64,000 nucleotides of DNA from IMGVR_UViG_3300020084_000003:62001-126000, one strand, 5' to 3'. Shown: positions 9,554 through 59,049, numbered from the stretch's first letter. Notes: a model not told the origin generated them from the letters alone. A program made the numbers and translations.

Positions 9554-9563
9554 AGGTAATAAA

Positions 9564-40373: not shown

Positions 40374-41483
40374 TTAGAACATTGGACTGTCTGGAACAGT
40401 AGTCGCAATCTCAGTATAGTGTAATAGTTCTAGTTTATTCACTACACCATCTGTTACTCTAATTGTTCCGTATCGTTTGAACCATGTTGAATAAATTCTG
40501 TCTAGAAAGATTTTAAGCTTTTCTTTATCTTGTTCAGATGCTTCCATTTCATCTGATACGCCTAGAAGAATTACCTCTTCAACCATTTCATGGTCAAACT
40601 TGATATGCTCAATGCCTGTTTTTGCTTCCATATATTTGTTAGTAATTCCGACTAATGAAAGATATGATATCGTGAGAATATCCCATTCAAGATAAGTCAT
40701 ACCAAGTTGGTCTTCATCTGAATTTGAAATGCCTAATCCGTCCGTAGGGACAACGCGCCAGAACTTTTCGGGCAGACCTAGCTCTTGTGCAATTACAGGA
40801 ATTTCTGTGGATTTGAAGAAGCTTTGTAGAGGGGCAAAGTCTCCCACATCACCGTTCACTGTGAATAAGCCTGCTGAATATTCTGAGAAATTGTCAGTGC
40901 TTACCACAATGCCATTTACAGACTTGGCAGCATCATACAGGTATGTCATACGCAGTCTAGCATATACATTTCCCCTACGTATATTGTAATCACTGGAATT
41001 TTCAGAATCTAATCCAATATCATCTACCATAACACTTGCTGCATAAGTCAAATCTTTGTAGTTGAGTTTAATGCCAAGAAATTCACACACTTCTTTTGCA
41101 AGATCGACTTCTTTTGGTTTTTGATTAATAGGAAGGGTATATGCGTGAATTTTAATGTCTGAGTTTTTTGCTTGTGCTGCTTTAAGAACGGCTAGAACGG
41201 TTGCGGAATCTGCGCCACCTGAAACGCCTACAACAAAGTTTGTAATGCCCGTTGCATCAACATAATCTATAACTGAACTTACAACATAATCCGTAATATC
41301 TTGCTCATGTCCATGATAAAAATATAGTGGTTTACAAACTACGCTTTTTAGCATATGGTGCATCCAAGGGCTTAGTGGTTCTGCTTCATTCTGTCGGGAG
41401 TTGTAAAGAATTCGTTCAAAAATCCCGTTGTCATATTCGATTGCAGCATTGGTAGCATTTTCTAGCATAGATTTTACATCCAT
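40374..41483 (-). CDS. nadE: NH3-dependent NAD+ synthetase (NadE family); ATG at 41483 preferred over TTG at 41498
   Basis: GVSGGADS PP-loop, GNVYARLRMTYLY, STDNFSE, GDVGDFAPL, PTDGL..SDEDQLG. Confidence 0.88.
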   Translation of the reverse strand: MDVKSMLENATNAAIEYDNGIFERILYNSRQNEAEPLSPWMHHMLKSVVCKPLYFYHGHEQDITDYVVSSVIDYVDATGITNFVVGVSGGADSATVLAVLKAAQAKNSDIKIHAYTLPINQKPKEVDLAKEVCEFLGIKLNYKDLTYAASVMVDDIGLDSENSSDYNIRRGNVYARLRMTYLYDAAKSVNGIVVSTDNFSEYSAGLFTVNGDVGDFAPLQSFFKSTEIPVIAQELGLPEKFWRVVPTDGLGISNSDEDQLGMTYLEWDILTISYLSLVGITNKYMEAKTGIEHIKFDHEMVEEVILLGVSDEMEASEQDKEKLKIFLDRIYSTWFKRYGTIRVTDGVVNKLELLHYTEIATTVPDSPMF

Positions 41484-41494
41484 GTGTCTTCCTT

Positions 41495-41995
41495 TCAAAT
41501 AAAATTTTCTAAGTAGTATTTAATCTCTGGTATCTGAGTCGCAAAATTAAATACTGGAATGTTATACAACTTGGCGATGCGAATCGCTTGGGCTGTCCCA
41601 CCTGTCATCTCACCATTTGGCGTCCAGCACAATATGAAAGATGCAGGCGTTTTAAGATCATCTCCTAACACCTGATTTGCATTTCTTGACATATATAACT
41701 GACCGTCTTCGTTGAGCCTGTTTGGTTTCGGATGCAGCTTTTTGGTGTAGTAGTCGTTAAAGGGTGGAATGATATAATCCTTACCGTTGACGAATTTTTT
41801 CTGAAACCCATCGAACGGAAGGTATATCCGTCTACCCTCTGGTGGTGCGCCTTCTTCAAAGAAAGAATCTGCACCAGCCGCACCGCCAGACCTTAGTATA
41901 TAACCTTTCTCATAAAGAAAAGTTGCAGTGTTTGCCATGATAGATTTGAACTTAGTAGGAGTCGCGCGACTTCCTATTCCTGCATAATACTTCAT
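41495..41995 (-). CDS. SLOG/DprA-like Rossmann-fold nucleotide-binding protein
   Basis: YAGIGSRATP, LRSGGAAGADSFFE, RNANQVLG, GGTAQAIRIA..IPVFN. Confidence 0.75.
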   Translation of the reverse strand: MKYYAGIGSRATPTKFKSIMANTATFLYEKGYILRSGGAAGADSFFEEGAPPEGRRIYLPFDGFQKKFVNGKDYIIPPFNDYYTKKLHPKPNRLNEDGQLYMSRNANQVLGDDLKTPASFILCWTPNGEMTGGTAQAIRIAKLYNIPVFNFATQIPEIKYYLENFI

Positions 41996-42390
41996 GGGTG
42001 AAGAGACATATCACTCAGAACAAATTTCACTTGATCCATTACATTCTCATCTGCGTATACATACGCACACGTGGCAATGTTTAGATAATGAATTGCAGTG
42101 CCATCAATGAGTGGATAGGTTGGATCGACAACCAAATCTGCGAGAATATTACCCATAGACCAAAGCATTGAGATTTTCTTTTCAATGTTAGAAATAGAAC
42201 CTCCGTCCAGAACATACACTGTTCCAAAACCTTGATTAGTTTCTTGGGTCCAAGAAGAAATATCTTTGCCAACTTTGGCGGCATTATTTACAAACGCATT
42301 AGAGGCATGGCTTGCTTGAGCCATCATTTTTCCTGCATTGGCCGAATTCATGTCTGTTCTCATTATGATGTATAGAACTGATTTTGTCAT
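41992..42390 (-). CDS. Peptidyl-tRNA hydrolase type 2 (Pth2)-like protein
   Basis: YIIMRTDM..AGKMMAQASHAS signature. Confidence 0.7.
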   Translation of the reverse strand: MTKSVLYIIMRTDMNSANAGKMMAQASHASNAFVNNAAKVGKDISSWTQETNQGFGTVYVLDGGSISNIEKKISMLWSMGNILADLVVDPTYPLIDGTAIHYLNIATCAYVYADENVMDQVKFVLSDMSLHP

Positions 42391-42394
42391 TTAT

Positions 42395-42820
42395 TTAATC
42401 CGATAGTTTTTCGTCAATTATCTTGCCTGCAAGCTTCATGTCTACTGATTGCCCATACTTAGCCTTGACCTCTTTCATATACAGACCTTTGTTGGGGTTG
42501 TCAAGTGAAATAGAGTTGATGAAGGCACGAAGATCATCTTCGCTGACCATCTGCGGAAGATACAATTCTAAAATCTCATTTTGAAATGATAGGCTTGCAT
42601 TCGTCGCTTCTGATTTAGATACTTCCAGAATTTCATTATTTTTCTGAATAATCTTCTTGATAGCTGCAATGGCTTCATCATCCGTAGTCTCACGGTTGCC
42701 AGCATTTTTACCAATAGCCTCTAGAGAGCCAATCACAAAGCTTAGAAATGATGCCACATCTTTTTGTTTATTTTTAAGTGCCGAAACTCTGGCAGCTTTA
42801 ATATCTGATATTACTGACAT
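42395..42820 (-). CDS. GatB/YqeY-domain protein
   Basis: ALKNKQK.., ILELYLPQMVSEDDL, GLYMKEVKAKYGQSVDMK. Confidence 0.8.
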   Translation of the reverse strand: MSVISDIKAARVSALKNKQKDVASFLSFVIGSLEAIGKNAGNRETTDDEAIAAIKKIIQKNNEILEVSKSEATNASLSFQNEILELYLPQMVSEDDLRAFINSISLDNPNKGLYMKEVKAKYGQSVDMKLAGKIIDEKLSD

Positions 42821-43089
42821 TTTACTTTCCTTTTAAATTTATTAAAATACTTACTATCGACTTTGTTAATTGATACCCTACCAGATTTTAAATCGTCCCT
42901 GATTTGTTGGAATTCGTTTTCAATCCAAAGATCAACATGACCATTTTCATCCACAATATCATAAATTGAATATTTGTGTAGAAAGCCATTATGTCCCGGT
43001 AGATTGGTTTCAATTACAATGCCGCTGATGCAACCTTCATTGTCATTCCAGTGAAAATCCCACCAAATATCCCAAGGACGATTTTGCAT
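42811..43089 (-). CDS. Hypothetical protein
   Basis: ORF packed within the minus-strand operon. Confidence 0.55.
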   Translation of the reverse strand: MQNRPWDIWWDFHWNDNEGCISGIVIETNLPGHNGFLHKYSIYDIVDENGHVDLWIENEFQQIRDDLKSGRVSINKVDSKYFNKFKRKVKCQ

Positions 43090-43093
43090 TTAT

Positions 43094-43354
43094 TTACTCC
43101 ATACCAACGGCAGATTTATATGTTTCTAGAAGAGCTTGCTCTTCCTCAACTGCTGCACGATCACGGGCGCGAAGCTTTACAACCATACCCATAATTTTTG
43201 TATCATACCCTCGCGCCTTGCACTCAGCTTTATGCTCCTTCATGCGGGTAGATACTTCCTTTTTATCGGCATCAATTCCTTCCCAAATTTCAATCATTTG
43301 AAGAAGTTCGCCACTAGCATTTGCGTAGTCGATATCATCGTTTTCATCACTCAT
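43094..43354 (-). CDS. gapR: GapR/DUF2312-family DNA-binding protein
   Basis: ELLQMIE..DKKE..KAECKARGYDTKIM..VVKLR..EEEQALLETYKSAVGM matches the GapR pattern. Confidence 0.82.
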   Translation of the reverse strand: MSDENDDIDYANASGELLQMIEIWEGIDADKKEVSTRMKEHKAECKARGYDTKIMGMVVKLRARDRAAVEEEQALLETYKSAVGME

Positions 43355-43368
43355 ATTATATTCCTTTA

Positions 43369-43911
43369 TTAACGTAGTTTAAGATGTTCTTCTGTTCCAG
43401 TTTCAAACATATTGCGGACACGCTCAGTAGAAACGGCACGGTAATTTTCGAGATTAATTTTGGGATATCCCATCATGTTGAGAAAAAACCCAGATGGCAT
43501 ATTGCCAAGTTTAATTTTATAATCCCTGACTGCATCAATCATGCGAGTTTGTTCACGTTGAAAGTCTTTGCGTCCACTTTCCATAAGCTGCTGTAGCTTG
43601 ACGTAAACAGTAGAGTCGATGTTAGGATTATCTTCTGCAATTGCTTGAAAGACTGCTTGCGATCCGTTTTCACCATAACGACCTTCAAGGGCGGCAGTAA
43701 TAACTTCACGCAAGTCATCACGTTGCATCTCTGGAACCTGTGCTGCCTCAAAAATGAGGTTTTGATACTGAGATGCAATGTTTACAGCATTATCTTGAAT
43801 TGCAACGATATTTTGTTCAAAGCGATTGCCCATGTTGTTGTATGATACAACAGTCAAGAAAATTGCACCAATGATGACGATAATAGCACCAATACCAATA
43901 AGACTTTTCAT
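43369..43911 (-). CDS. LemA-like membrane-anchored protein
   Basis: N-terminal TM followed by SYNN; helical body; FP-like MPSGFFL near the C-terminus. Confidence 0.55.
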   Translation of the reverse strand: MKSLIGIGAIIVIIGAIFLTVVSYNNMGNRFEQNIVAIQDNAVNIASQYQNLIFEAAQVPEMQRDDLREVITAALEGRYGENGSQAVFQAIAEDNPNIDSTVYVKLQQLMESGRKDFQREQTRMIDAVRDYKIKLGNMPSGFFLNMMGYPKINLENYRAVSTERVRNMFETGTEEHLKLR

Positions 43912-43923
43912 TTACAATCCCTT

Positions 43924-45036
43924 TCAAAAAATTTCATTACGACAGAAGAAATAAGTCACAGCCGGGGTGACGATTAGAGTTATAACCCACAAAAGAATGT
44001 AGCTGAACCACGATAGTTTAACATCATATTTAAGATAGTCAAACTTTGCTGGATCAGGCTCAACATAGTTGGAATTTATAATCGACCCAACTGTTTGCAA
44101 ATCCTCATAGAGTGAGTTTATATTTTTGTTGACAAAATGATCCTTAATCAGCACTTCAACAGAGCTAGATTCGGACCAACTGAACACTCTCACATATTGA
44201 TACATGTTGTCTGGTTTGTCAAGCCCCAATACGACCACAACATCATTTAGCCTAAAACCATCCCATTTTACCTGCAAAGACGTGGCAAAATCCTCTGGAT
44301 ACTCAGTTACATAAACAATTAGGTTCGCATTGTTGGACATGGCAGAGTTGATTTCGGATAGACGCCTGTTGTGTTCTTTTAAAAATTCTGGCGATACGTC
44401 ATGAGTGAAGACAACCCTATCAATATTATAGTAGTCATAGATGGCAGGCATTTTAACTTTGAGTTCGGGATAGGCATCATCTGAGTGACGAAACAGAGTA
44501 TCCGACGCCGCTTTTACATAATTTGTATAAGATTTCGTGGAGGTTACAGGATCATTCCTTTTTGCATTTTTGTAGAACGGAGGTTCATATACGCCCTGTT
44601 GGTCAACTCGTTCGATCTTGTAATCACCGAGCGTTGTTTTCACATAATACTTTCTCTCCCAAGGATACTTAGGATAGTATTGTGTTTCAAAGTATGTTTC
44701 AGTTTTCATATTACCATCTGCATCGCGGGCGAGGCGAGTTTTAGTAACTGTTCTGGTATAATGAACTTCACACCATGAGTCCTTACTAGTAGACCACGTT
44801 TGCATACACGATCTTTGAACCATTTGTTTGTCAGATACAACACCGTTGACGTGCATGGTATCTGTGACCTGTGAGTAATTATCAATCAAAATGACGCCTG
44901 AAACTACAACAAGTGTCGCTACAAGCTGAACCAGTAGCTCTTTCACACTATATTTACAACTTAAAACATAGTGTGAAACTACCATCACTAGTAGAGCCGG
45001 AATGAAAAACAAAAAGAAATTTAAAAGCATTATCAA
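43924..45036 (-). CDS. Membrane protein (2 N-terminal TMs + 1 C-terminal TM) with large extracytoplasmic domain
   Basis: Hydrophobic segments; NDVVVVLG motif reminiscent of TPM domains. Confidence 0.6.
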   Translation of the reverse strand: MIMLLNFFLFFIPALLVMVVSHYVLSCKYSVKELLVQLVATLVVVSGVILIDNYSQVTDTMHVNGVVSDKQMVQRSCMQTWSTSKDSWCEVHYTRTVTKTRLARDADGNMKTETYFETQYYPKYPWERKYYVKTTLGDYKIERVDQQGVYEPPFYKNAKRNDPVTSTKSYTNYVKAASDTLFRHSDDAYPELKVKMPAIYDYYNIDRVVFTHDVSPEFLKEHNRRLSEINSAMSNNANLIVYVTEYPEDFATSLQVKWDGFRLNDVVVVLGLDKPDNMYQYVRVFSWSESSSVEVLIKDHFVNKNINSLYEDLQTVGSIINSNYVEPDPAKFDYLKYDVKLSWFSYILLWVITLIVTPAVTYFFCRNEIF

Positions 45037-45533
45037 GTCCTTTTTGATTTATGATGCACTGCAACTACCGTGCGTTGAAATTTGCGAAACATCCTCTCTT
45101 GAACATTCATGTATTCAATCGAAGTCATGAATGCAATCAAAGCAAACGCACAGAATGTCAGAAAGATAGGAACTAGCGTAGGGAAGTATGCAATACACAG
45201 ACCCACGATAGAAAAAATTGAAATCCATCGAAACACGTTGAAAAATATGATGGTGTTGTCATCATACTCCATAAGGGTCAGTTTGCCTTCTTTAATTTTC
45301 TTGGCATATACTTCAACTGTCTTACGGATAATAGTTTCATTTTCTAGAAATTCTTTATCATCTAGTTTAAGAAGAGGGGCGTGATGCATTGTCACTAGGT
45401 AGAAACTGAGGCTCTTAAATAAGTTAAGACCCATAGAAAAAATAAGAAAATAGGTTAGGGCAGTAAATGCCCCAAAATACAGAAACGATCCTACGATTAT
45501 AGGGAACCCAAATAGTGTAAGAAAAATTTTCAT
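45033..45533 (-). CDS. Hypothetical membrane protein
   Basis: About four hydrophobic segments; SD GGGGA. Confidence 0.6.
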   Translation of the reverse strand: MKIFLTLFGFPIIVGSFLYFGAFTALTYFLIFSMGLNLFKSLSFYLVTMHHAPLLKLDDKEFLENETIIRKTVEVYAKKIKEGKLTLMEYDDNTIIFFNVFRWISIFSIVGLCIAYFPTLVPIFLTFCAFALIAFMTSIEYMNVQERMFRKFQRTVVAVHHKSKRT

Positions 45534-45562
45534 TTTATATCCCCTTAAATAAGGAAGGTTGC

Positions 45563-46531
45563 TTACGCAACCTTCGCCATGTCAAGTGCAAGAGTAAGGG
45601 CTTGCTGTTTCACATTGGAGTTTTTACCAAACCAAGCCGATTCAAGACGAGTATCGTTTTCACGACCAAGAACGTGATCGGTTGCGTAAGTAACAGCGTT
45701 GAACGCCTGCCAGAAGGTTCCAGCTTGATACTCAGCGCCCGGTTGATTTTCGATCAGGTCCATGACAATCTGACCATTCCGAGAAAGGTCTTTGCCTTCC
45801 ATTTCAGATTTACCAAAAAGAGTGCCATAGTATTCGGTCAGAGCTTCTTTGGTGAATTTCTTCGAACCAAGGAATTCAGCAGCTTCCTTGAAGTTATTCA
45901 GTTTGTCGGAAGAAACACCAAGGATGGATTTGACGCGATCAGCATCAAAGACCGAGCGGTGGTTGATTTTCACAGCATTTTTTCCGCGTTCTGCCAGAGC
46001 CATAGTCAGGGTGTTATTGCAAACAACACGCTCGGCGCAGAAACGGATATCAATCGACTTACCGTAAAGGTGCGGGTTGCTGAAAAGCAGGTAGCCTTTC
46101 ACTTCATCGCCGTTGAAGAGGGTGAAGCCATCCTTGATCGAAGCAAGCGCCCAGACAATGCGGCCATCTTTCAGCGCACCAGCGGTATCCATAACCATGT
46201 CGCCTTTTTCAACAAAATCGTGGAAGAAGTTGAATGCTTCGCTGTTTTGAACTTCTTTCCAGTTTTCACCAACAATAGTCATGATCTTGCCGTCGCTATC
46301 GCGAACAAGAGCATCTTTTCCGGTTTTGACCCGTTGCAGGCCAGCGCCAAAATCACCTTCAATGAACATCTCATGTTTGCTCACGGTCCAATCAAGGTTG
46401 GCAGCTTTCATGATTTCTGCGGGAGTCATATCATCACCGACAGGAACACCAAGGCCATGCCAAGGTTTGCCATTGCTGGCGCGATAAGCCATAGAAGCGG
46501 TGCCGTTGCTCAGGATTTCAAGTTCATGCAT
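45563..46531 (-). CDS. DUF932/DUF945-family protein (start at ATG 46531)
   Basis: PWHGLG, LDWTV, VQNSEAFNFF, TAGALKDGRIVWALA, RVVCNNTL, WQAFNAVTYATDH; AGGAG SD precedes 46531. Confidence 0.85.
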   Translation of the reverse strand: MHELEILSNGTASMAYRASNGKPWHGLGVPVGDDMTPAEIMKAANLDWTVSKHEMFIEGDFGAGLQRVKTGKDALVRDSDGKIMTIVGENWKEVQNSEAFNFFHDFVEKGDMVMDTAGALKDGRIVWALASIKDGFTLFNGDEVKGYLLFSNPHLYGKSIDIRFCAERVVCNNTLTMALAERGKNAVKINHRSVFDADRVKSILGVSSDKLNNFKEAAEFLGSKKFTKEALTEYYGTLFGKSEMEGKDLSRNGQIVMDLIENQPGAEYQAGTFWQAFNAVTYATDHVLGRENDTRLESAWFGKNSNVKQQALTLALDMAKVA

Positions 46532-46571
46532 TATAAATACTCCTATAAGGTTTGTGTCTTTCGATACAGAA

Positions 46572-46602
46572 CTTATAACCGATTCGGATGTAACTGTCAA
46601 CC
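46572..46602 (-). promoter_or_regulatory. Sigma70-like early promoter
   Basis: Minus strand GGTTGACA-N17-TATAAG. Confidence 0.7.
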
Positions 46603-46625
46603 ACTCATTTTAAGATCGTGTCGTT

Positions 46626-46970
46626 TTAGTGCATGGCCGTAGAAATCATGGGAACGCTATGGATCATGTTTCCGGCCCACTCATTGTAGCCACTCTTTAG
46701 AATCTCTTGATATGATGCGAACTTATTTGATTCGTTTTCAACTTTTAGTTCGAATATTTTGCACTTTTCAATCTCCTTTGGTCGCAAGACTTCTTTTAGA
46801 AACTCGCTGGCAACCTCTTCGGATGAAAATTTAGTAGTTTGTTTAATGATAAACGGATGCTCTTCGTCCTGTTCATCTAGTGTGAAAAGAAGTTGTGTAT
46901 TGTATCCATTAAGACTTTCGCCAAGAGCGGCAAAAATTCCTCTTTCTTTATGTATGATAATATATGACAA
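46626..46970 (-). CDS. Hypothetical protein
   Basis: ORF with GGAGG SD, in the operon downstream of DUF2786. Confidence 0.6.
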   Translation of the reverse strand: MSYIIIHKERGIFAALGESLNGYNTQLLFTLDEQDEEHPFIIKQTTKFSSEEVASEFLKEVLRPKEIEKCKIFELKVENESNKFASYQEILKSGYNEWAGNMIHSVPMISTAMH

Positions 46971-46972
46971 TT

Positions 46973-47707: not shown

Positions 47708-47746
47708 AGAAAACTCTCCTATCAGGATGGAATTACAATATGTCTC

Positions 47747-47777
47747 TGTCTAGCATGTCTGATTCTGGTTGTCAACC
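47747..47777 (-). promoter_or_regulatory. Sigma70-like early promoter with alphaproteobacterial-type -10
   Basis: Minus strand GGTTGACA-N15-GCTAGACA. Confidence 0.6.
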
Positions 47778-48092: not shown

Positions 48093-48104
48093 GGCGTCCT
48101 TCCT

Positions 48105-49219: not shown

Positions 49220-49250
49220 TTGTTTCCTCTCACTATTTTCTTTATACATT

Positions 49251-51343: not shown

Positions 51344-51367
51344 TATAAAAAAGTCACTCCTTGTTTC

Positions 51368-51721
51368 TTATTCCTCTGTTATAGCACTTTCTTCTTCATT
51401 TGTCAAGTCCTCAGATTCGTCTTCATCTGATTCGTCAAAAGATTGTCTGACTATTTCTTGTATAGGGTGAGCATAACCCATCTTTTTCATCATTAGTGAT
51501 TTTATAGAATCTCTGACAAAGAAAATGTCTGCCATATCAGTATCTTCAAGATGAAACCCTGCACGATCCATTTCCATAATCATAATATTGGAAATGAAGT
51601 CAGAAACATCATCAATATAACCCATTCTAAATTCGGTTATATTCTCTTGCATTTTCTCGCTTGTTGCTGGTTTGGTTTTTTCTTTTGAAAATCTATCTGG
51701 AAATTTAATTACGTTATCCAT
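51368..51721 (-). CDS. Hypothetical protein
   Basis: MDNVIKFP N-terminus; lies in the operon upstream of rnh. Confidence 0.65.
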   Translation of the reverse strand: MDNVIKFPDRFSKEKTKPATSEKMQENITEFRMGYIDDVSDFISNIMIMEMDRAGFHLEDTDMADIFFVRDSIKSLMMKKMGYAHPIQEIVRQSFDESDEDESEDLTNEEESAITEE

Positions 51722-52676
51722 TTTTTATCTCCTGTAAAACGTTCTCCCACTGCCTTTTGAATTCTAACAAAGAATAGGGAATGAACCTGCTGGATTTTAT
51801 TTGCATGTCTTCTGTCACGCTGGAATAGTTATCCAATATATATTTAGATAAACTGTAAGTTCTATTCGCAACATCATTATAACTTTCAGACATTGGAAAC
51901 ATATAAGTCATGTTCTGCGCCGTTTCAGGTAATGCTCCAAAATCAGGATGAATGCAAATGCAACCATTCTGAATAGCCTCCATCAATGCAAGACAACTTG
52001 TTTCGTGCCAGATACAAGGATAAATAAACATGTCACTTTTCTTTAAATAATCCAAGACTACTGAATTTGGTTGTGATCCGTGATACGTTATATTATCTGT
52101 GTTATTTATTTTATCAAATAAGCTTTGGTAGTTAACATCATTTTCTTCCCATCCATATATTTTGAAAGATGAGAATACATCCAAAGTTACATCATATTCT
52201 TTCACCAATTCGTTGAATACTGGAAGCAATAGCTCCAATCCTCGATGTGGTGTAGTGTGATATATTATTTTGACCGGACCATCATTTTCTTTTTTGCTAT
52301 TTGGATTGAAATAGTCTCCAATGGCATTCTTTATGACTACGCATTTAGAGTATGGAAGGTCGAAGTGTTGGATGAACAAATCTCTTTGATGATATGAAAC
52401 GAATACGAATTTTGCATATGAATTCAGTATATTTTTATCTTTTAGTTTTTCATATCTTATGTCAAATGGAAGATCGTGTAGATACAATATGTTCTTCATT
52501 TTTGGTTCTATATCATACACTCTGCTGAAATGAATGCAAACGCCTTTAAGCAAATCATTATCTACTAGCTGTAGCAATCTATTTCGCATTATTTCTGTTC
52601 CGCCCATTGCGGCTGGACTTGTCAGCTTATTAAGTATTTTACCATTATTAATTTGGCTCATATTAAACCTTTGCAT
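51714..52676 (-). CDS. Glycosyltransferase (GT4/group 1-like)
   Basis: MGGTE, HTTPHRGLELL, YPCIWHETSCLALMEA (E-x7-E), GALPET. Confidence 0.85.
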   Translation of the reverse strand: MQRFNMSQINNGKILNKLTSPAAMGGTEIMRNRLLQLVDNDLLKGVCIHFSRVYDIEPKMKNILYLHDLPFDIRYEKLKDKNILNSYAKFVFVSYHQRDLFIQHFDLPYSKCVVIKNAIGDYFNPNSKKENDGPVKIIYHTTPHRGLELLLPVFNELVKEYDVTLDVFSSFKIYGWEENDVNYQSLFDKINNTDNITYHGSQPNSVVLDYLKKSDMFIYPCIWHETSCLALMEAIQNGCICIHPDFGALPETAQNMTYMFPMSESYNDVANRTYSLSKYILDNYSSVTEDMQIKSSRFIPYSLLEFKRQWENVLQEIKNG

Positions 52677-52703
52677 AAAAAAGTGGGGCTGTTACACCCC
52701 ACT
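52677..52703 (-). terminator. Intrinsic terminator (minus strand)
   Basis: AGTGGGG..CCCCACT hairpin with an A-run on + (T-run on -). Confidence 0.7.
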
Positions 52704-52723
52704 CGTATAAATTTGAAAAAGTA

Positions 52724-52993
52724 TTAAAGGGGGAAGACTTTTTTCATAACGTCTTTATAAGACCCGCCTTTATAAGTGTTCATTTTGACACGAATAAATA
52801 GCCTATTAGTTTCGTTCTTGTTTGGATTTCGAATAGTGATCCAAGGGTTTCCACCGGCAAGCCATGATTTTTGTGCAGCAATATGACGGTCTGACGCAGG
52901 ACGTGCAGCCTTCATGGCGCGACGAGTAGCGGCAGAAACGTTACGGCCTGTGCCTTTGGAAGTGTAAGATGTTTTGTTACCTTGTTTAGCCAT
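52724..52993 (-). CDS. Small basic hypothetical protein (start at ATG 52993)
   Basis: YTSKG..W..G.NPWITIRNPN..TNRLFIRV; AAGGA SD. Confidence 0.6.
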   Translation of the reverse strand: MAKQGNKTSYTSKGTGRNVSAATRRAMKAARPASDRHIAAQKSWLAGGNPWITIRNPNKNETNRLFIRVKMNTYKGGSYKDVMKKVFPL

Positions 52994-53021
52994 AATATAT
53001 ATTCCTTCTTCATATTTAATT

Positions 53022-53237
53022 TTATATCGAATCAAGTTCTTTCAGTATGCGAAACGATATGTCTGTTATATCACACTCTGGTTCCGAGCGCAAGACAAAA
53101 ATCAATCTGTCCATAAATAACAATTCCATATTGGTGTCCGACGCTACAGATAATGCTTCAAAAACAGTTTCTATATCGTAAGGATTTTCGCAAAAAACTT
53201 GTCTTTCTTTATTCTTCTTTTGAGTTTTTTCGCTCAT
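53022..53237 (-). CDS. Hypothetical protein
   Basis: AAGGA SD; packed in the operon. Confidence 0.5.
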   Translation of the reverse strand: MSEKTQKKNKERQVFCENPYDIETVFEALSVASDTNMELLFMDRLIFVLRSEPECDITDISFRILKELDSI

Positions 53238-53856
53238 TATGTGTCCTTATAATCTCTGTAATAATAGAGTATAGGTCTTCTAAGCTACCGTTATTGTGGA
53301 CAACATATCCGCTCAATGGAACTGTTTCTTCAAAAAATTGATCTTCTAGTTTTTCAACATCAGTTTTGTGATTTATTACAATCTCTTCAAGTATATTTTC
53401 AAACTTAATATATTTTCTCGAATCATTTCGGTAGTCCAAACCATCCCTATACAACCTTACGATGATGACTTCTTCATCACCAAATTTATTTATAATATGG
53501 GAAAGCTCTTCGACAAAACCACCATCACTTATACAGTAATTCTTACCGTGTTCCATCTTTTCAGAAGCTTTAAGACCATAATATGAGTTGCCATATAAGG
53601 GTTTTATTATGTTTTCTGACGTATGGATAAGTGCTTCTCTTCTAGAGAAATTTTTAAGTTTTTCTTCCTTCACATCTTTGTGTTTGGAGTTGTAATTTGA
53701 GAAAAACCAATCTCGGTCTACTCTAAAAAGAGCAATCGTATCTGCAAAAAGCTGTTCTTTGAACTCGACATGAGTAAAATCTTTTTCATTTTTTAAAAAT
53801 TCACATGAGGCATCTTTCCCTGACGAGGGTGGCCCATTAAATATTATCACAGTCAT
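53209..53856 (-). CDS. Deoxynucleoside monophosphate kinase (T4 gp1-like)
   Basis: NGPPSSGKD P-loop, REALIHTSE..KPLYG, ISDGGF.EE, HNNGSLEDL. Confidence 0.8.
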   Translation of the reverse strand: MTVIIFNGPPSSGKDASCEFLKNEKDFTHVEFKEQLFADTIALFRVDRDWFFSNYNSKHKDVKEEKLKNFSRREALIHTSENIIKPLYGNSYYGLKASEKMEHGKNYCISDGGFVEELSHIINKFGDEEVIIVRLYRDGLDYRNDSRKYIKFENILEEIVINHKTDVEKLEDQFFEETVPLSGYVVHNNGSLEDLYSIITEIIRTHNERKNSKEE

Positions 53857-53865
53857 TTATATAAA

Positions 53866-54603
53866 TTATTCTCCATGTTGAAAAATTCCCTCATATACCC
53901 ATCCCATAATGGATTTTTTTCTTTGATTAGGACTTATACAATCCCCAACTCTTCCGCGCTTACATTTTAAAAAAGATTGTATTTCTTTTCTAGTCATGTA
54001 AACAGAACCTTTTTCTGGATGGGTCCATATATATTTGGTAAAATCTTCACCACTTCTAAAGTTAGGTTCAAATTCATTTCCAACTTCGCCTGCAAAATAC
54101 CACCCTCTAACAGACTTACAGTGTTTCCTCTTAATTACACAAGAGTTGACATTACATTTATAACCGCCTAAAAACAAAGTCATGCCATATTGGGATTTAT
54201 AAATCTTTTCTTTAGTCTTTTTGTTAATCCACACATATATTTTATCATCGTAACGTGGGTGACTTTCTGCATTTCCTAATCCGATACCTCCCGGTATCTT
54301 ATTCATACATAATTTATCTTTAAACCACAAATCACCAATTATTATATTTTCATTCAATAAATTGCTACTATGGCTATCGTTCATCATTATTATTTCTTTT
54401 ACAAACTCAGGATTATTAGTAAAATGTCTTCTTCTAGCTACAGGAGGTTTATGCTTAAAACCATTTATAACCATCGCAAGGTTCCTTATCCAATCACCAC
54501 TACCAAAATAATCATGGTCTTCGGGATTCTCGAAACAGGAACTTCTACCTATATAATATTCGCCAGTATTTGTATTAGTTATTTTATATAGGTAAAAATT
54601 CAT
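53866..54603 (-). mobile_element. Free-standing GIY-YIG (Seg-like) homing endonuclease
   Basis: FYLYKITNTNTGEYYIG..YFGSG, conserved E and N, followed by repeated small DNA-binding modules (KSVRGW / KSIMGW). Confidence 0.8.
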
Positions 54604-54604
54604 A

Positions 54605-54820
54605 TCATTCCTTTACGTCTGTAAATGCCTCTTTCCACTCATCTTGAGTGATCCCAGATATTATAAATTCAACATCTTCGTCATTAAGATATGGCATGGC
54701 ATCATGTATACTCATATAACCCAAGTTATATGTTATCCAATCATCAGGATTTACGGGAATGTCTCTAATTCTTTCAATTCCTGTTATTACACTTGTTCTC
54801 TTGATTCTCATTTTAACCAC
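54605..54820 (-). CDS. Hypothetical protein
   Basis: IHDAMPYLNDEDVEFIISGITQDEW conserved-looking phage motif. Confidence 0.6.
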   Translation of the reverse strand: MVKMRIKRTSVITGIERIRDIPVNPDDWITYNLGYMSIHDAMPYLNDEDVEFIISGITQDEWKEAFTDVKE

Positions 54821-54850
54821 CTTATTATGACAAATTTATAATCATGGTAT

Positions 54851-54923
54851 TATTTATACCACAACATATGCTGCTTGTCAAGCAAAAAATCACCGCATAT
54901 ATAATAGGTTAATGGTATAAATA
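54851..54923. promoter_or_regulatory. Divergent late promoters
   Basis: TATTTATA at 54851 (minus) and TATAAATA at 54916 (plus). Confidence 0.65.
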
Positions 54924-54953
54924 AAGTTACATGTGAACAAATAAGGAATCGTT

Positions 54954-55487
54954 ATGAGAATTGCAGCCATTGACTACAGTATGACCTCTCCCGCGATATG
55001 CGTAGCAAATACAGAAAAACCTCTATCTTTTGAAAATTGTTTTTTCTACAACATTTCAAATATTAAAAATAAGCCATATAGAGAAAATATTCATTACACT
55101 GAAATGAAATACATCACTGACGATGAAGAAAGATTTGACTATCTTTCAAATTGGGCAGTTGAAGCACTCCAAGTCAACAATGTTGAAAAGGTTATCATGG
55201 AAGGTTATTCCTTCGGAAGCAAATCTAGCCGACTATTTCAAATTGGAGAAAATGGCGGTGTCCTGAAACACAAGATTTTCAGAATGAATATACCTTTGAT
55301 AAAGCTTGCTCCGACAGAAGTCAAGAAGGTTTTTCATGGAAAAGGTAACGCTTCTAAAGAAGATATGATTGAAGCACTTTTCACCAAAGAAGGTATTAGG
55401 TTGGGAGATAATGCAAAGTCGCCCATAGGAGATATAGTCGATTCTTATGCTATATTATATTCTGCTGTAACCAGAGGATTAATATAA
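54954..55487 (+). CDS. RuvC-like Holliday junction resolvase
   Basis: IAAIDYS, MEGYSFG, PTEVKK..GKGNASKEDM, DIVDSYAI catalytic acidic residues. Confidence 0.8.
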   Translation: MRIAAIDYSMTSPAICVANTEKPLSFENCFFYNISNIKNKPYRENIHYTEMKYITDDEERFDYLSNWAVEALQVNNVEKVIMEGYSFGSKSSRLFQIGENGGVLKHKIFRMNIPLIKLAPTEVKKVFHGKGNASKEDMIEALFTKEGIRLGDNAKSPIGDIVDSYAILYSAVTRGLI

Positions 55488-55518
55488 AAGAGGCAGTGTT
55501 TCATCACTGCCTCTTTTT
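55486..55518. terminator. Bidirectional terminator
   Basis: AAAAGAGGCAGTG-TTTCAT-CACTGCCTCTTTT between convergent genes. Confidence 0.85.
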
Positions 55519-55777
55519 ATTTCAAGTTTCCTAGACCTTGCATATTTTCGGAAACATAAATTTCGTATTCAGTGAAGCCTCCAATATGTTTACCATTAAC
55601 AAAAATTTGTGGGACTGTTTTTGCATTTGGAACCAAGGCAAGTAATTCTTGTTTTGTGTCGCCTTCGGAAACGTCTTTCCACTCATACTTAATTTGGTTT
55701 ACGTTATTCAACTTCTTAGCTTCATCGCAATAAAAGCATCCGGGTCTTCCGAAAACTATAACATTTGCACTCATCAT
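55517..55777 (-). CDS. Glutaredoxin
   Basis: CFYC, TVPQIFVNGKHIGGF. Confidence 0.92.
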   Translation of the reverse strand: MMSANVIVFGRPGCFYCDEAKKLNNVNQIKYEWKDVSEGDTKQELLALVPNAKTVPQIFVNGKHIGGFTEYEIYVSENMQGLGNLK

Positions 55778-56007
55778 TTACTCCTATAATATTCTATAAT
55801 ATGATTTATTATCATTTGCACTTCTTCTTTGGGTATCTTACCCTGTGAATATACATCAGGATTTAGCCTGCATATTCCACAATCTTCCATATAAGCATCG
55901 ACGTAAATGTAAGACTTGCTCTCTTCGTCATATATGGTTATTACTAACGTTTTCTCTGGTGTGTTGGTTCTACTCGGTAGTATCTTTGAAATAATCTTGT
56001 TTATCAT
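55774..56007 (-). CDS. Hypothetical protein
   Basis: ORF overlapping its neighbours in the operon. Confidence 0.5.
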   Translation of the reverse strand: MINKIISKILPSRTNTPEKTLVITIYDEESKSYIYVDAYMEDCGICRLNPDVYSQGKIPKEEVQMIINHIIEYYRSK

Positions 56008-56167
56008 TTAGATACTTTTCACCTTCCGCTGTCACGACCCATTCCCCATTATCATGAAAAATATAACCGTTACCTTTAAGACGGTTGATGTATGGAGTAT
56101 GTTTGTTTGACACCATTATATTTTTGTCTTTTAATTTTTGCAACAACTCTAAGCTCTTGTTATCCAT
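55970..56167 (-). CDS. Small hypothetical protein (possible winged helix)
   Basis: INRLKGNGYI..WVVTAEGEKYL resembles a wHTH wing motif. Confidence 0.45.
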   Translation of the reverse strand: MDNKSLELLQKLKDKNIMVSNKHTPYINRLKGNGYIFHDNGEWVVTAEGEKYLNDKQDYFKDTTE

Positions 56168-56513
56168 CTAAAGATATTCCTTCAACGTTGTAAGACATGA
56201 TATCATCATAATCAAATATTCTGTGATTTATACCATTCACTTCTACATCCAAGAGCAGATGGCTTATAATTATGACGTTTTCAAACATGAAAATATCTTT
56301 CAATTCTTGGTATTCTTTGGCTTTAACTACTACCAAACAATCTTTCAGAACGCAGCTTTTAAATTGTATCTTCTTATCTTTGATGTTTCCGAAGTCGAGT
56401 ATTCCATCCATATTTCTATTTTTAATTACGAAATCATTATTAAATTTATTAGTATGTATTAAATATCTATCTGTGCAAAAAACATCTCTTGTTATAAAAA
56501 TGTTATCTTCCAT
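56160..56513 (-). CDS. Hypothetical protein (ATG 56513 preferred over 56582)
   Basis: ORF; the shorter start avoids an 80-bp overlap with the MTase. Confidence 0.5.
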   Translation of the reverse strand: MEDNIFITRDVFCTDRYLIHTNKFNNDFVIKNRNMDGILDFGNIKDKKIQFKSCVLKDCLVVVKAKEYQELKDIFMFENVIIISHLLLDVEVNGINHRIFDYDDIMSYNVEGISLDG

Positions 56514-57048
56514 AAAATTGTATATTGTCCTCTTCACTTTTATTTGGAACAAACAAATACCAGCATACATCGTCTTTGCCACTCATGGTTGTTCCTTCAA
56601 TCCATTTCATTCTTCCTACAGTTACAATTTTTGTGCAGTATTTTTGTAAATATGGGGCAGCTTTCATGGTGAACATCCAGTTCGCATCAAACAAAAACCA
56701 TGTGGGTTTCATTGAAGCAAAATGTTCTATTGAGTGATGTAGCAAATCTCTTGACCAAGGTGGGTTCGAAATGATAAACTCCGATTCGGAAAGATCAGCC
56801 TCAGTAACGTTTATATATGATTTTTCGATGAATGTCAAGTCTGTAATGTTATGTTCGTAATCTGGCTCTATATCAGATGCGTATACACATTTTCCTTCAA
56901 GTTGATTGATTAAATCGCCTCTTCCGCAAAAGGGTTCTGCATATGTATAGGTTTCTGGTAAAAATGGCTTTATAGCCTTTCCCGCTTTAGGATCAAATGT
57001 TCTGTAATAATCCTTAGCAATTCTGTCAAAATCTGACCGCTTACCCAT
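56503..57048 (-). CDS. DNA N6-adenine/N4-cytosine methyltransferase
   Basis: DYYRT, EPFCGRG SAM-binding motif, ISNPPW catalytic motif. Confidence 0.8.
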   Translation of the reverse strand: MGKRSDFDRIAKDYYRTFDPKAGKAIKPFLPETYTYAEPFCGRGDLINQLEGKCVYASDIEPDYEHNITDLTFIEKSYINVTEADLSESEFIISNPPWSRDLLHHSIEHFASMKPTWFLFDANWMFTMKAAPYLQKYCTKIVTVGRMKWIEGTTMSGKDDVCWYLFVPNKSEEDNIQFYGR

Positions 57049-57101
57049 TATAAATCTCCATAATAATTTTATATATGGATTATTTATAACAGAATCTAGT
57101 A

Positions 57102-57207
57102 AATTATGATTGGGCGAAGCCCAATTTTGCGAAGCAAAATTTCATGATTCTTCTTACTTGACAGGACTCATGAAACCCTATAGAGTCTTATAAGAATCAT
57201 GAGTCCT
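57102..57207. repeat. Cluster of inverted repeats including two GCGAAGC mini-hairpins
   Basis: ATTGGGC-GAA-GCCCAAT (57109-57125), AATTTTGC-GAA-GCAAAATT (57123-57141), AGGACTCATGA/TCATGAGTCCT (57163-57173/57197-57207). Confidence 0.85.
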
Positions 57208-57305
57208 ATAATTTAATCACGAATCACAAGATTCATTATATCACAGGTTGTATTTTTGTCAAGTCCCTAAATAAACCTTGACATATTGTCGCAGTGTGAT
57301 AATAT
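57158..57305. promoter_or_regulatory. Divergent/convergent sigma70-like promoters
   Basis: +: TTGACA(57158)-N17-TAGAGT; -: TTGACA(57262-57257)-N16-TATAAT; +: TTGACA(57278)-N16-TAATAT upstream of pnuC. Confidence 0.6.
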
Positions 57306-57341
57306 GGACTCAATCGAATCACTATAACAAGGAGTTTTGTT

Positions 57342-57995
57342 ATGACTATAAAGAAAGACGATTTTCAATTAAATATTATGCTAATTTGCGTAGGTTTTAT
57401 TCTTACGGTTTTAACTCATTATATTTGTGTCATGTTGGGAGTTCAACTACCAGACATTAATATGCTTGAGTTTGTTGCTGTTGCTACTAGCTATACATGC
57501 ACTATCATGTTCGCTATGCAGAAGAGAGCAGCATACTTTTACGGAATTATCAGCACGTTTTTTCTGTGCTGGTTCTTTGCAACACAAGGAATTTTCGCGT
57601 TAGCAATTTTTAACGGTGTTCTAGTTATCAGTTTAATTTACGGATACTGGCGTTGGGGTCCAGATGGACGACCGATTCCAGTTACAAATATCAAAGGTTT
57701 CAAATCATTTGCCGGTTACGGAATGTTTACAGTTATTATCGCAGGTTTATTCCTTCTGCTTGTGGGCGCTTCTTCCAAGATCGACATTTTTCTGGCATCG
57801 GCTTCCGCAACCGCGCAGCTTATGCTAGACAATAAAAAGCTGGAAAACTGGCTTGTATGGATGGTCATTAACGTGTTCTCTATCGTTTTCTTCATTCAAA
57901 GCGGCTTCTGGCTATTGGCAATTCAATTTATGCTATTCTTGCTGAACGCTATTTTCGCGTATTTCTCTTGGAGAAAGGGTCTAGTAAATGTCTAA
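57342..57995 (+). CDS. pnuC: Nicotinamide riboside transporter PnuC
   Basis: Multi-TM; YGYWRW, AQLMLDNKKLENWLVWMVINVFSI motif. Confidence 0.88.
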   Translation: MTIKKDDFQLNIMLICVGFILTVLTHYICVMLGVQLPDINMLEFVAVATSYTCTIMFAMQKRAAYFYGIISTFFLCWFFATQGIFALAIFNGVLVISLIYGYWRWGPDGRPIPVTNIKGFKSFAGYGMFTVIIAGLFLLLVGASSKIDIFLASASATAQLMLDNKKLENWLVWMVINVFSIVFFIQSGFWLLAIQFMLFLLNAIFAYFSWRKGLVNV

Positions 57996-59049
57996 AGATG
58001 AAAAAATTCATGGCCTAATTCTCGGAACGTTCATGCCCTTTCATAAGGGGCATGAACTACTAATCAACTTCGGCAAAGAATATACTGAACAATTTGGGCG
58101 TGGTCGCCTTCTGGTAATTCTTTCATCTCGCAGCAATGAACCCATTTCAGGTAATATGCGTCTGGATGCAATCAGAAAGACTTTTGGAAACGATGTGTCG
58201 ATTTTTCATCATATTGACGATGATGCTCCACAAAATCCAAAAGACAAAGATGACGTTAAATTCTGGGAATACTGGAAGAAAGTTATCACCAAAGCTGCCA
58301 TTCAAAGTAATTTAAATCCATACGCAATAAAGTATGTATTTTCATCTGAAAACTATGGTGACAAAGTAGCAGAAATTATTGATGCAACTCATGTCAAATT
58401 TGACCAAGCTAGAACGGCTGTCCACGTAAGCGGAACGCAAATCAGAAACAACCCTTTGTCAAATTACCAACACATGAACGCGCACATGATTACAAATCTT
58501 CGTCGCAGGTATGTTTTGTTTGGAGCCGAATCGGTTGGCAAGACTACTTCTCTAAAATATCTAGGCAATAGTCACTACGGGTCACATACCCTACCTGAAT
58601 ATGCCAGACCGTTTTTAGAAGAATTGGAAGACAAGTCTCCGTCCGAAAAGAACATGTGCAGTATCTTCATGGCGCAGCATTCTATGGAAATTGCCGCAAT
58701 GAAACAAGTCGGCGGTTCTCTACTGACGTTTATGGATACTGATATCATGTCCACTTTTGGATATGCAAGGCTGGTAAAGATGAAAACAAATCAGTTTGAA
58801 CATTTGGTTCCAATTGATTTTAGAAGAACGTATTTCGTTCTGTCACAAGATGAGGTTCCTTTTGAAAAGGACATTCTCAGATATGGTGGCGATGTAAGAG
58901 AAACCAAGGATAGTTTTTGGATCAATCTGCTAGAAGAATTTAATCTAAGATACTTTGTTGTCAAAGGCGATTTCAGTAGCAGGATGGACCAAATTAACGC
59001 TATAATAGCAAAAGATTTCAAGAAGGACTTTCACTTTAACAGAGAGTAG
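57988..59049 (+). CDS. nadR: NadR-type bifunctional NMN adenylyltransferase / ribosylnicotinamide kinase (no HTH)
   Basis: GTFMPFHKGH, FSSENYG, VSGTQIR; GAESVGKTT P-loop, PEYAR, DTD. Confidence 0.88.
   Translation: MSKDEKIHGLILGTFMPFHKGHELLINFGKEYTEQFGRGRLLVILSSRSNEPISGNMRLDAIRKTFGNDVSIFHHIDDDAPQNPKDKDDVKFWEYWKKVITKAAIQSNLNPYAIKYVFSSENYGDKVAEIIDATHVKFDQARTAVHVSGTQIRNNPLSNYQHMNAHMITNLRRRYVLFGAESVGKTTSLKYLGNSHYGSHTLPEYARPFLEELEDKSPSEKNMCSIFMAQHSMEIAAMKQVGGSLLTFMDTDIMSTFGYARLVKMKTNQFEHLVPIDFRRTYFVLSQDEVPFEKDILRYGGDVRETKDSFWINLLEEFNLRYFVVKGDFSSRMDQINAIIAKDFKKDFHFNRE

What the first reader, a model, noticed from the sequence alone, without database searches (positions are those of the whole stretch)
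40374..59049. Phage NAD+ supply set combining NadE with PnuC-NadR
Seen: nadE (40374-41483), and pnuC-nadR (57342-59049) behind a sigma70-like promoter. Knowledge: PnuC imports nicotinamide riboside and NadR converts NR to NMN to NAD. NadE amidates NaAD, but Francisella NadE amidates NaMN to NMN. Many defences (Thoeris, SIR2/TIR effectors) deplete NAD+, and the described phage reconstitution routes (NARP1, NARP2) use other enzymes. Phage pnuC/nadR are known by themselves. Inference: NadE plus NadR could form a NaMN-to-NMN-to-NAD route in addition to NR import, giving a distinct counter to NAD depletion.
Basis: partly seen in the sequence, partly recalled or inferred. Interest (0 to 1): 0.6.

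Follow-up and report, generated by a model that had tools for sequence, protein, structure and literature searches.

The report
Phage NAD supply genes: NARP3 plus NadE
A 285-kb T4-like phage carries a nicotinamide-riboside importer and kinase/adenylyltransferase pair (already published as the counter-defence NARP3), a second known NAD-rebuilding pair elsewhere in its genome, and an uncharacterised virus-type NAD synthetase whose substrate cannot be read from sequence.

Summary
All three genes sit at the stated coordinates. NadE-like is 40374-41483 on the minus strand. pnuC (57342-57995) and nadR (57988-59049) overlap by 8 bases and lie behind a TTGACA-16-TAATAT promoter-like site and an AAGGAG ribosome site.

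The interpretation needs three corrections.
1. PnuC-NadR was published in August 2026 as NARP3, a phage module that restores NAD+ against Sir2-HerA.
2. The same genome also encodes Nampt and NadM-Nudix (the NARP2 pair) about 70 kb away. The phage therefore does not rely on 'other enzymes'.
3. NadE is 16 kb from pnuC-nadR, on the other strand, in a different transcription unit.

The NadE-like protein has an intact PP-loop active site and a confident NadE fold. It belongs to a distinct extended clade found in 316 viral contigs and as a second NadE copy in Alphaproteobacteria.

The evidence on its substrate conflicts. The phage has no NadD, and related viral genes cluster with PncB and NadM-type adenylyltransferases; both fit a NaMN-to-NMN route. 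But 35 of 53 cellular relatives are fused to an NMN deamidase, which would make that route a futile cycle, and most viral copies have no other NAD gene within the flanks examined.

I favour NaAD amidation (about 0.5) over NaMN amidation (about 0.25). Overall this is a new member of known kinds, of modest interest.

The parts
40374..41483 (-). NadE-like NH3-type amidoligase, 369 aa. Core NadE domain about residues 66-304, with about 65 extra N-terminal residues (conserved SRQ...PLSPWF motif) and a long C-terminal insertion ending in TWFKR.
   Evidence: PF02540 E 2.6e-37; TIGR00552 121 bits against 63.65. Best solved relatives are all NadE. AlphaFold2 model pLDDT 92.6, and all listed Foldseek matches are NadE, target TM up to 0.84. 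SGGxDS and other motifs are invariant in 65 relatives. No glutaminase domain.
40338..40361 (.). GC-rich hairpin flanked by A and T runs, between the convergent gp23 and NadE-like genes. Likely a two-way intrinsic terminator that ends the minus-strand unit.
   Evidence: 10-pair stem, TTCG loop, T run.
57278..57305 (+). Sigma-70-like promoter site TTGACA-16-TAATAT with an upstream TG, ahead of pnuC. A perfect divergent site (57262-57235, minus strand) faces the other way.
   Evidence: Consensus match only; the count in the region is not above shuffles.
57342..57995 (+). PnuC-family nicotinamide riboside transporter, 217 aa.
   Evidence: PF04973 E 1.1e-30; TIGR01528 just over its cut-off. AAGGAG ribosome site at 57329-57334.
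57988..59049 (+). NadR-type bifunctional enzyme (NMN adenylyltransferase plus ribosylnicotinamide kinase), 353 aa, without the N-terminal helix-turn-helix domain. Overlaps pnuC by 8 bases.
   Evidence: TIGR01526 E 1.3e-32 over positions 2-324 of 325 (below the equivalog cut-off); PF13521 E 1.7e-17. Motifs PFHKGH, VSGTQIR, GAESVGKTT. Full-length matches to solved NadR structures 8x7f, 9x6f/9x6h, 6gye and 1lw7.

Best explanation
The phage carries three separate ways of feeding NAD+.

1. In the window, pnuC-nadR is a NARP3-type module. PnuC imports nicotinamide riboside; NadR phosphorylates it to NMN and adenylylates NMN to NAD+.

2. About 70 kb away in the same genome, Nampt plus NadM-Nudix form a NARP2/KVP40-type pair (nicotinamide + PRPP to NMN to NAD+).

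3. The NadE-like gene encodes an ammonia-dependent PP-loop amidoligase of a distinct, virus-rich NadE clade. I take it to amidate a deamidated pyridine nucleotide, most likely NaAD made by the host NadD. That would pull the host's deamidated pool into NAD+. This pool comes from de novo synthesis, the Preiss-Handler route, or NMN deamidated by host PncC.

Shown here: gene identities, motifs, fold, and the genome-wide gene inventory. Shown in the literature for homologues: NARP3 and NARP2 activities and their rescue from NADase defences. Inferred: that this phage's copies do the same, the NadE substrate, and that the purpose is counter-defence rather than general supply.
For: - Identities and motifs.
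- NARP3 is defined as PnuC-like plus NadR-like, with NR import, NR-to-NMN-to-NAD conversion and rescue from Sir2-HerA (PMC13464706).
- Nampt: NF006629 572 bits against a cut-off of 405. NadM-Nudix: 362.6 bits. Genome positions 194002-195396 and 196472-197521.
- NadE fold and active site are intact.
- Points favouring NaAD as substrate:
  (a) 35 of 53 alphaproteobacterial relatives carry a C-terminal PncC-family domain over the TIGR00199 cut-off, which is incompatible with NMN synthetase activity.
  (b) Most of the 80 viral loci examined have no other NAD gene within the flanks held, up to 10 kb. A lone copy must work with whatever the host supplies, and by my own knowledge NadD is near-universal in bacteria.
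  (c) Nearly all characterised NadE enzymes use NaAD (PMC3376133).
- The block from NadE to PnuC-NadR is kept in three other phage contigs at 42-59% NadE identity. An 82%-identical Nampt lies on a contig of the same length (286,639 bp, same source) as one relative's.
Against: - The phage has no NadD, PncB, PncA, PncC or Prs, so a NaAD-using NadE depends wholly on host NadD.
- In about 20 viral loci with at least four different gene orders, this NadE clade sits beside PncB and a NadM-type (not NadD-type) adenylyltransferase. That is the Francisella gene set.
- In a 735-kb phage, a canonical NadE sits in one cluster with PncB, PncA, PnuC and NadR.
- In five of five alphaproteobacterial genomes the clade is a second copy beside a canonical glutamine-type NadE. 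It is therefore not the housekeeping enzyme and may have diverged in function.
- No expression or activity data exist for this phage, and its host is unknown.
Confidence: 0.6

Rival explanations
1. The NadE-like enzyme is an NMN synthetase (NaMN + ATP + NH3 to NMN), and the phage's own NadR and/or NadM-Nudix then make NAD+. This would give a phage-encoded route from host NaMN that bypasses host NadD and NadE.
For: - The phage has no NadD; its only adenylyltransferases are NadR and NadM-Nudix.
- NMN synthetase arose in Francisella exactly where NadM replaces NadD (PMC3376133).
- Recurrent PncB + NadE-clade + NadM-type modules occur in other viral contigs in several gene orders.
- A PncB/NadE/PnuC/NadR/PncA cluster occurs in phage LR756501.
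- Francisella NadE (3fiu) is among the best solved matches (E 2.5e-19).
Against: - Relatives fused to a PncC-type NMN deamidase would form a futile cycle.
- Ordinary NAD synthetases match as well or better than 3fiu.
- NadM enzymes can be bifunctional for NaMN and NMN and work with a conventional NAD synthetase, as in archaea and Acinetobacter (PMC3376133). PncB-NadE-NadM modules therefore fit an ordinary Preiss-Handler route too.
- Other cytidylyltransferase-like genes exist elsewhere in the large viral records, so NadD is not excluded there.
- Most viral copies have no other NAD gene within the flanks examined.
Confidence: 0.25
2. The genes serve general NAD+ supply for a large phage's metabolism (raising NAD+ in any host cell) rather than specifically countering NADase defences.
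For: - KVP40-type genes raise NAD+ even without a defence system (bioRxiv 10.1101/2024.02.11.579819).
- Jumbo phages widely carry NAD synthesis genes (PMC11662467).
- Three parallel routes in one 285-kb genome suggest high demand.
- No defence-related family matched the three window genes.
Against: - NARP2 and NARP3 homologues rescue phages from Thoeris, DSR2 and Sir2-HerA.
- The genome has no NAD-dependent DNA ligase and no NAD kinase that would point to a special demand.
- The two readings are not exclusive.
Confidence: 0.3
3. The NadE-like protein amidates a carboxylate outside NAD metabolism, for example a sugar acid or another nucleotide. Its extra N- and C-terminal segments would reshape the substrate pocket.
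For: - About 30 viral loci place the clade next to GDP-mannose dehydratase, epimerase and DegT aminotransferase genes.
- It is a second copy beside canonical NadE in bacteria.
- It scores far below the full-length NadE equivalog cut-offs (129.9 against 255).
Against: - All NadE-specific motifs beyond the PP-loop are invariant.
- The sugar-gene context belongs to a single clade in the tree, so it is probably inherited synteny.
- The other recurrent partners are NAD genes: PncB, NadM-type enzymes and PncC.
Confidence: 0.07

Closest known systems
NARP3 (Bas30_87 PnuC-like + Bas30_86 NadR-like of Escherichia phage TrudiRoth; Sci Adv 2026, PMC13464706)
   Same: Two adjacent, co-oriented genes: a PnuC-family transporter followed by a NadR-type kinase/adenylyltransferase without a DNA-binding domain. 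Full-length similarity to solved NadR-type structures, including a 357-aa 'nicotinamide-nucleotide adenylyltransferase' with two entries (9x6f/9x6h, E 2.4e-13). I take that protein to be the phage enzyme, but this is not verified.
   Different: Very divergent in sequence: under 40% identity to any NadR in public phage records. The host is unknown and the genome has low G+C. The paper describes NARP3 as largely restricted to phages of Enterobacteriaceae. Here it sits in a 285-kb T4-like phage that also has NARP2 and NadE.
NARP2 / KVP40 NadV-NatV (Nampt + NMNAT-Nudix)
   Same: The same genome encodes Nampt (NAMPT_N + NAPRTase) and a bifunctional NadM-Nudix, two genes apart on the same strand.
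   Different: Combined here with NARP3 and NadE.
Francisella tularensis NadE* (NMN synthetase, 3fiu) with NadM
   Same: Single-domain NadE fold. The genome lacks NadD and has NMN adenylyltransferases.
   Different: No specific sequence or structural affinity to 3fiu over ordinary NAD synthetases. Different clade, with added N- and C-terminal segments. Relatives are fused to an NMN deamidase. Activity is untested.
Phage Preiss-Handler clusters (pncB-nadD-nadE) in gut jumbo phages (PMC11662467)
   Same: [quoted passage not shown]
   Different: This phage has neither pncB nor nadD. In the related viral loci I examined, the adenylyltransferase is NadM-type rather than NadD-type.

Membership tests
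NARP3 (phage PnuC-NadR module) | Adjacent, co-oriented PnuC-like and NadR-like genes forming one unit | tested here: met
   57342-57995 and 57988-59049, same strand, 8-base overlap. The same pair is kept in relatives L172, L173 and L171.
NARP3 (phage PnuC-NadR module) | NadR-like protein with both NMN adenylyltransferase and ribosylnicotinamide kinase domains and catalytic motifs | tested here: met
   TIGR01526 positions 2-324 of 325, E 1.3e-32. PFHKGH, VSGTQIR, GAESVGKTT. Full-length matches to solved NadR structures.
NARP3 (phage PnuC-NadR module) | NR import, NR-to-NMN-to-NAD+ conversion, and rescue from an NAD+-depleting defence | not testable with these tools
   Needs transport, enzyme and plaque assays.
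NARP2 (Nampt + NMNAT) | Nampt-clade phosphoribosyltransferase together with an NMN adenylyltransferase in the same phage genome | tested here: met
   NF006629 572 bits (cut-off 405) with NAMPT_N. NadM-Nudix 362.6 bits on NF003786, slightly below the 397 cut-off. Outside the window.
NAD synthetase NadE, ammonia-dependent single-domain type | PP-loop SGGxDS, the NadE-specific motifs and the NadE fold | tested here: met
   PF02540 and TIGR00552 are over their cut-offs. The motifs are invariant in 65 sequences. All listed Foldseek matches are NadE.
NAD synthetase NadE, ammonia-dependent single-domain type | Full-length equivalence to a characterised NadE family (NCBIfam equivalog cut-off) | tested here: not met
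   NF010587 129.9 bits against 255; NF001979 82.3 against 250. The protein falls in a separate extended clade.
NAD synthetase NadE, ammonia-dependent single-domain type | NaAD as the amidated substrate | not testable with these tools
   Context evidence conflicts.
NMN synthetase (Francisella NadE*) | Preference for NaMN over NaAD | not testable with these tools
   The paper that defines the determinants (PMC2651253) is not held. My recalled residue list failed a consistency check, so I did not use it.
NMN synthetase (Francisella NadE*) | Genomic signature: NadD absent and an NMN adenylyltransferase present | tested here: inconclusive
   Met within the phage genome, but a phage also has its host's enzymes, and the host is unknown.
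NMN synthetase (Francisella NadE*) | Specific relatedness to FtNadE* | tested here: not met
   3fiu scores E 2.5e-19 against 1.2e-24 for Pyrococcus NadE, and ranks 6th by Foldseek.

The most novel reading that the evidence does not exclude
The extended, virus-rich NadE clade (316 viral contigs) is an NMN synthetase or a dual NaMN/NaAD amidoligase. With PncB and NadM-type enzymes in other phages, and with NadR or NadM-Nudix here, it would form a further phage NAD+ reconstitution route. That route would draw on nicotinate or NaMN and bypass host NadD and NadE. It would also recapture NMN that host PncC deamidates away from NARP2 and NARP3.
Probability: 0.25. Interest if true: 0.6.

Novelty: new member of a known kind. 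Interest (0 to 1): 0.35.

Why it matters
NAD+ depletion is a common bacterial defence, and phage NAD+ reconstitution is an active topic; three pathways have been named since 2024. This genome stacks two of them (NARP2 and NARP3) and adds a NadE that no one has tested in a phage. If that NadE clade proves to feed the deamidated pool into NAD+, it would add a fourth route. It would also explain why hundreds of viral contigs carry this gene, often alone. If it is an ordinary NAD synthetase, the finding is a divergent example of known modules.

Tried and rejected
- Megablast of the NadE and pnuC-nadR DNA against public phages found nothing.
- The 2009 PNAS paper on Francisella NMN synthetase is not held. 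Three further literature searches gave no residue-level specificity determinants.
- I tried to use residues recalled from memory (Tyr27, Gln133, Arg236 of FtNadE). By hand alignment, Tyr27 lines up with what I recall as the conserved nicotinate-stacking Tyr32 of Bacillus NadE, and with Tyr79 here. It therefore cannot discriminate, so I dropped the whole argument.
- The neighbourhoods of the alphaproteobacterial copies hold no conserved NAD genes, only stress-type and redox genes.
- Five large viral records carrying the PncB-linked NadE have no NadR. They do have several cytidylyltransferase-like genes elsewhere, so NadD cannot be excluded there.
- PADLOC models gave nothing for the three window genes.
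- The 166-aa neighbour of NadE has only weak DprA-like similarity.
I walked along them by exact-protein look-ups instead.
- The tree is the quick version; the careful search did not finish.
- I did not use the read-mapping, complex-prediction or large profile-search tools, because none would settle the substrate question.
Full report
**What is there.** The window is bases 62001-126000 of a 284,776-bp virus record with 38% G+C. It encodes a T4-type major capsid protein at 38990-40318 (Gp23, E 8e-147). That protein is 61-65% identical to those of Stenotrophomonas phage DLP6, the Sinorhizobium phiM12 group and Methylophilales phages. The T4 late-promoter motif TATAAATA occurs 23 times against 6.5 expected.

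- The NadE-like ORF runs 40374-41498 (-) from a TTG. The ATG at 41483 follows the upstream gene's TGA and an AAGGAAG site, and it matches the start of relatives.
- pnuC (57342-57995) and nadR (57988-59049) overlap by 8 bases. They follow TTGACA-16-TAATAT (57278-57305) and an AAGGAG site.
- A perfect divergent promoter-like site on the other strand (57262-57235) faces the long minus-strand gene array. That array ends with the NadE-like gene and a strong hairpin terminator at 40338-40361.
- NadE and pnuC-nadR are thus in different, divergently oriented units 16 kb apart, not in one cluster.

**PnuC-NadR.** PnuC matches PF04973 (E 1e-30). NadR matches the NadR adenylyltransferase/kinase model end to end and carries the PFHKGH, VSGTQIR and GAESVGKTT motifs. 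It has no helix-turn-helix domain. It aligns over its full length with solved NadR-type proteins.

This two-gene arrangement was published in August 2026 as NARP3. There, a phage PnuC-like transporter imports nicotinamide riboside and a NadR-like enzyme converts it to NAD+, restoring NAD+ and plaquing against Sir2-HerA (PMC13464706). The 2024 NARP1/NARP2 preprint had already predicted it. NadR homologues occur in 714 public phage records. This part of the finding is a divergent new member of a known module.

**The rest of the genome.**
- Present: one Nampt (NAMPT_N + NAPRTase; NF006629 572 bits against a cut-off of 405) at genome 194002-195396, and a bifunctional NadM-Nudix at 196472-197521. 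This is the KVP40/NARP2 pair.
- Absent: Prs, PncA, PncC, NAD kinase, NAD-dependent ligase, and any further cytidylyltransferase-fold gene. So there is no NadD, and no PncB-type phosphoribosyltransferase.
- The claim that this phage counters depletion with enzymes other than the described routes is therefore wrong for the genome as a whole. It stacks NARP2, NARP3 and a NadE.

**The NadE-like protein.**
- It passes PF02540 and TIGR00552, but scores far below the full-length NadE equivalog cut-offs.
- Its best solved relatives are all NadE: Pyrococcus 2e18 at E 1e-24, then the Francisella NMN synthetase 3fiu at E 2.5e-19.
- An AlphaFold2 model from 65 relatives is confident (pLDDT 92.6). Every listed Foldseek match is a NadE, with Helicobacter 1xng first and 3fiu sixth.
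- The PP-loop SGGADS and the motifs GNxxARxRM, TDNxSE, GDxGD, KS, PTDGLG and DExQ..Y are invariant across the clade.
- There is no glutaminase domain, so ammonia is the expected nitrogen donor.
- Compared with ordinary single-domain NadE, it has about 65 extra N-terminal residues with a conserved SRQ...PLSPWF motif, and a long C-terminal insertion ending in TWFKR.

**Where this clade occurs.**
- Clade-specific peptide patterns find 316 viral contigs and 390 places in prokaryote genomes. Full-length matches in prokaryotes are essentially confined to Alphaproteobacteria.
- In five of five alphaproteobacterial genomes tested, the clade member sits beside a canonical 570-630-aa NadE. It is therefore a second copy, not the housekeeping enzyme.
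- In 35 of 53 such loci it is fused at its C-terminus to a PncC-family NMN deamidase domain that is over the TIGR00199 cut-off. Its bacterial neighbours are stress and redox genes, not NAD genes.
- In a quick maximum-likelihood tree the extended clade separates from ordinary NadE (support 91). The window's lineage is its own deep branch (99). The alphaproteobacterial copies nest among viral sequences.

**Context in other viruses.**
- About 20 of 80 loci, in at least four different gene orders, put this NadE next to a PncB-type nicotinate phosphoribosyltransferase and a small NadM-type (archaeal-like) adenylyltransferase, once with a separate Nudix gene.
- About 30 loci put it beside sugar-nucleotide genes. 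Another group puts it beside a GMP reductase/IMPDH-family gene. Each of these groups is largely one clade in the tree, so they look like inherited synteny.
- Five large viral records of the PncB type have no NadR.
- Separately, the 735-kb phage LR756501 has PncB, a canonical NadE, a TonB-dependent receptor, PnuC, NadR and PncA in one same-strand cluster. NadE alongside PnuC-NadR in a phage therefore already exists in public data.
- Jumbo-phage pncB-nadD-nadE clusters have been described bioinformatically (PMC11662467).
- I found no paper that tests a phage NadE.

**Conservation in the lineage.** Three other phage contigs keep the block gp23 | NadE-like, 166-aa, PTH2-like, YqeY ... | PnuC-NadR. 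Their NadE identities are 59, 58 and 42%. An 82%-identical Nampt lies on a contig of 286,639 bp from the same source, which I take to be the same contig as one of these relatives. The whole set is inherited together in this lineage. That shows retention, not functional coupling of NadE with NadR.

For NaMN (NMN synthetase):
- No NadD in the phage.
- The phage's adenylyltransferases belong to families described as NMN adenylyltransferases.
- PncB-NadE-NadM modules recur in other viruses.
- In Francisella, replacement of NadD by NadM went with conversion of NadE into an NMN synthetase (PMC3376133).

For NaAD (ordinary NAD synthetase):
- Fusion to an NMN deamidase in the closest cellular relatives would make an ATP-burning futile cycle with an NMN synthetase.
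- There is no special similarity to 3fiu.
- NadM enzymes can be bifunctional and work with a conventional NAD synthetase.
- Most viral copies have no other NAD gene within the flanks held. That suits an enzyme using what host NadD supplies, which I take from general knowledge to be near-universal in bacteria.

I put NaAD at about 0.5, NaMN or dual specificity at about 0.25-0.3, and another substrate under 0.1. Either way the logical role is the same: moving the deamidated pyridine-nucleotide pool into NAD+. That pool includes NMN that a host PncC would drain from the NARP2 and NARP3 routes. PncC is known to drain NMN in E. coli (PMC7384224).

**Verdict.** PnuC-NadR is a divergent NARP3. The genome also has NARP2. 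The NadE-like gene is a member of an uncharacterised, virus-rich NadE clade whose substrate needs an enzyme assay. Novelty: new member of known kinds, with an open and testable question about the NadE clade.

Noticed in passing
outside the window: genome 194002-195396 (-) and 196472-197521 (-) = L004:6002-7396 and L004:8472-9521: Nampt (NadV) and a bifunctional NadM-Nudix, the NARP2/KVP40 pair, separated by a 224-aa ORF of unknown function.
   Followed up: yes
L169 (LR756501.1 418000-434000), ORFs 5002-13475 (-): A 735-kb uncultured phage has PncB, a 170-aa ORF, NadE, a 718-aa TonB-dependent receptor, a HAD-like 205-aa ORF, PnuC, NadR and a PncA-like isochorismatase on one strand. An outer-membrane receptor gene inside a phage NAD salvage cluster is unusual.
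   Followed up: partly
L089-L141 (alphaproteobacterial genomes); proteins P0040, P0031, P0064: 35 of 53 loci encode the NadE-like domain fused to a C-terminal PncC-family NMN deamidase domain, in genomes that also have a canonical glutamine-type NadE. In the quick tree these copies nest among viral sequences. The deamidase releases ammonia and the NadE domain consumes it, so the fusion might couple the two reactions; this is speculation.
   Followed up: partly
window 41495-42820 (-): Three small genes lie directly upstream of NadE: a 166-aa weakly DprA-like Rossmann protein (phrog_768), a 132-aa protein whose homologues match PTH2 (peptidyl-tRNA hydrolase), and a 141-aa YqeY/GatB-like protein. 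The trio is kept in two relatives (L005, L006). In a third (L170) the middle gene is a 211-aa protein with no family match.
   Followed up: partly
viral loci L022, L023, L029, L034, L044, L045, L058, L059 and others: About 30 viral contigs place this NadE clade directly upstream of a 146-aa ORF, a 256-aa ORF, an epimerase, a GDP-mannose 4,6-dehydratase and a DegT aminotransferase. They are nearly one clade in the tree, so this is probably inherited gene order.
   Followed up: partly
outside the window: L004:3532-4335 (-), L004:4560-5600 (-), L004:11680-12378 (-): A Thg1-like tRNA-His guanylyltransferase and an RNA ligase lie next to each other (possible tRNA repair). A nucleoside 2-deoxyribosyltransferase-like protein lies a few kb away.
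   Followed up: no
window 57235-57305: Back-to-back promoter-like sites sit in the 293-base gap between the minus-strand array and pnuC: a perfect TTGACA-16-TATAAT with TG on the minus strand, and TTGACA-16-TAATAT with TG on the plus strand.
   Followed up: partly
whole window, mostly plus strand 7358-38953: The T4 late-promoter motif TATAAATA occurs 23 times against 6.5 +/- 2.4 in shuffles. The hits are concentrated before the structural genes, with four tandem or near-tandem copies at 37776-37936.
   Followed up: no
window 59059-59409 (+): A 116-aa ORF with no family match starts 10 bases after nadR. ORFs of similar size (104-123 aa) follow nadR in the relatives, so it may belong to the same unit.
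   Followed up: no
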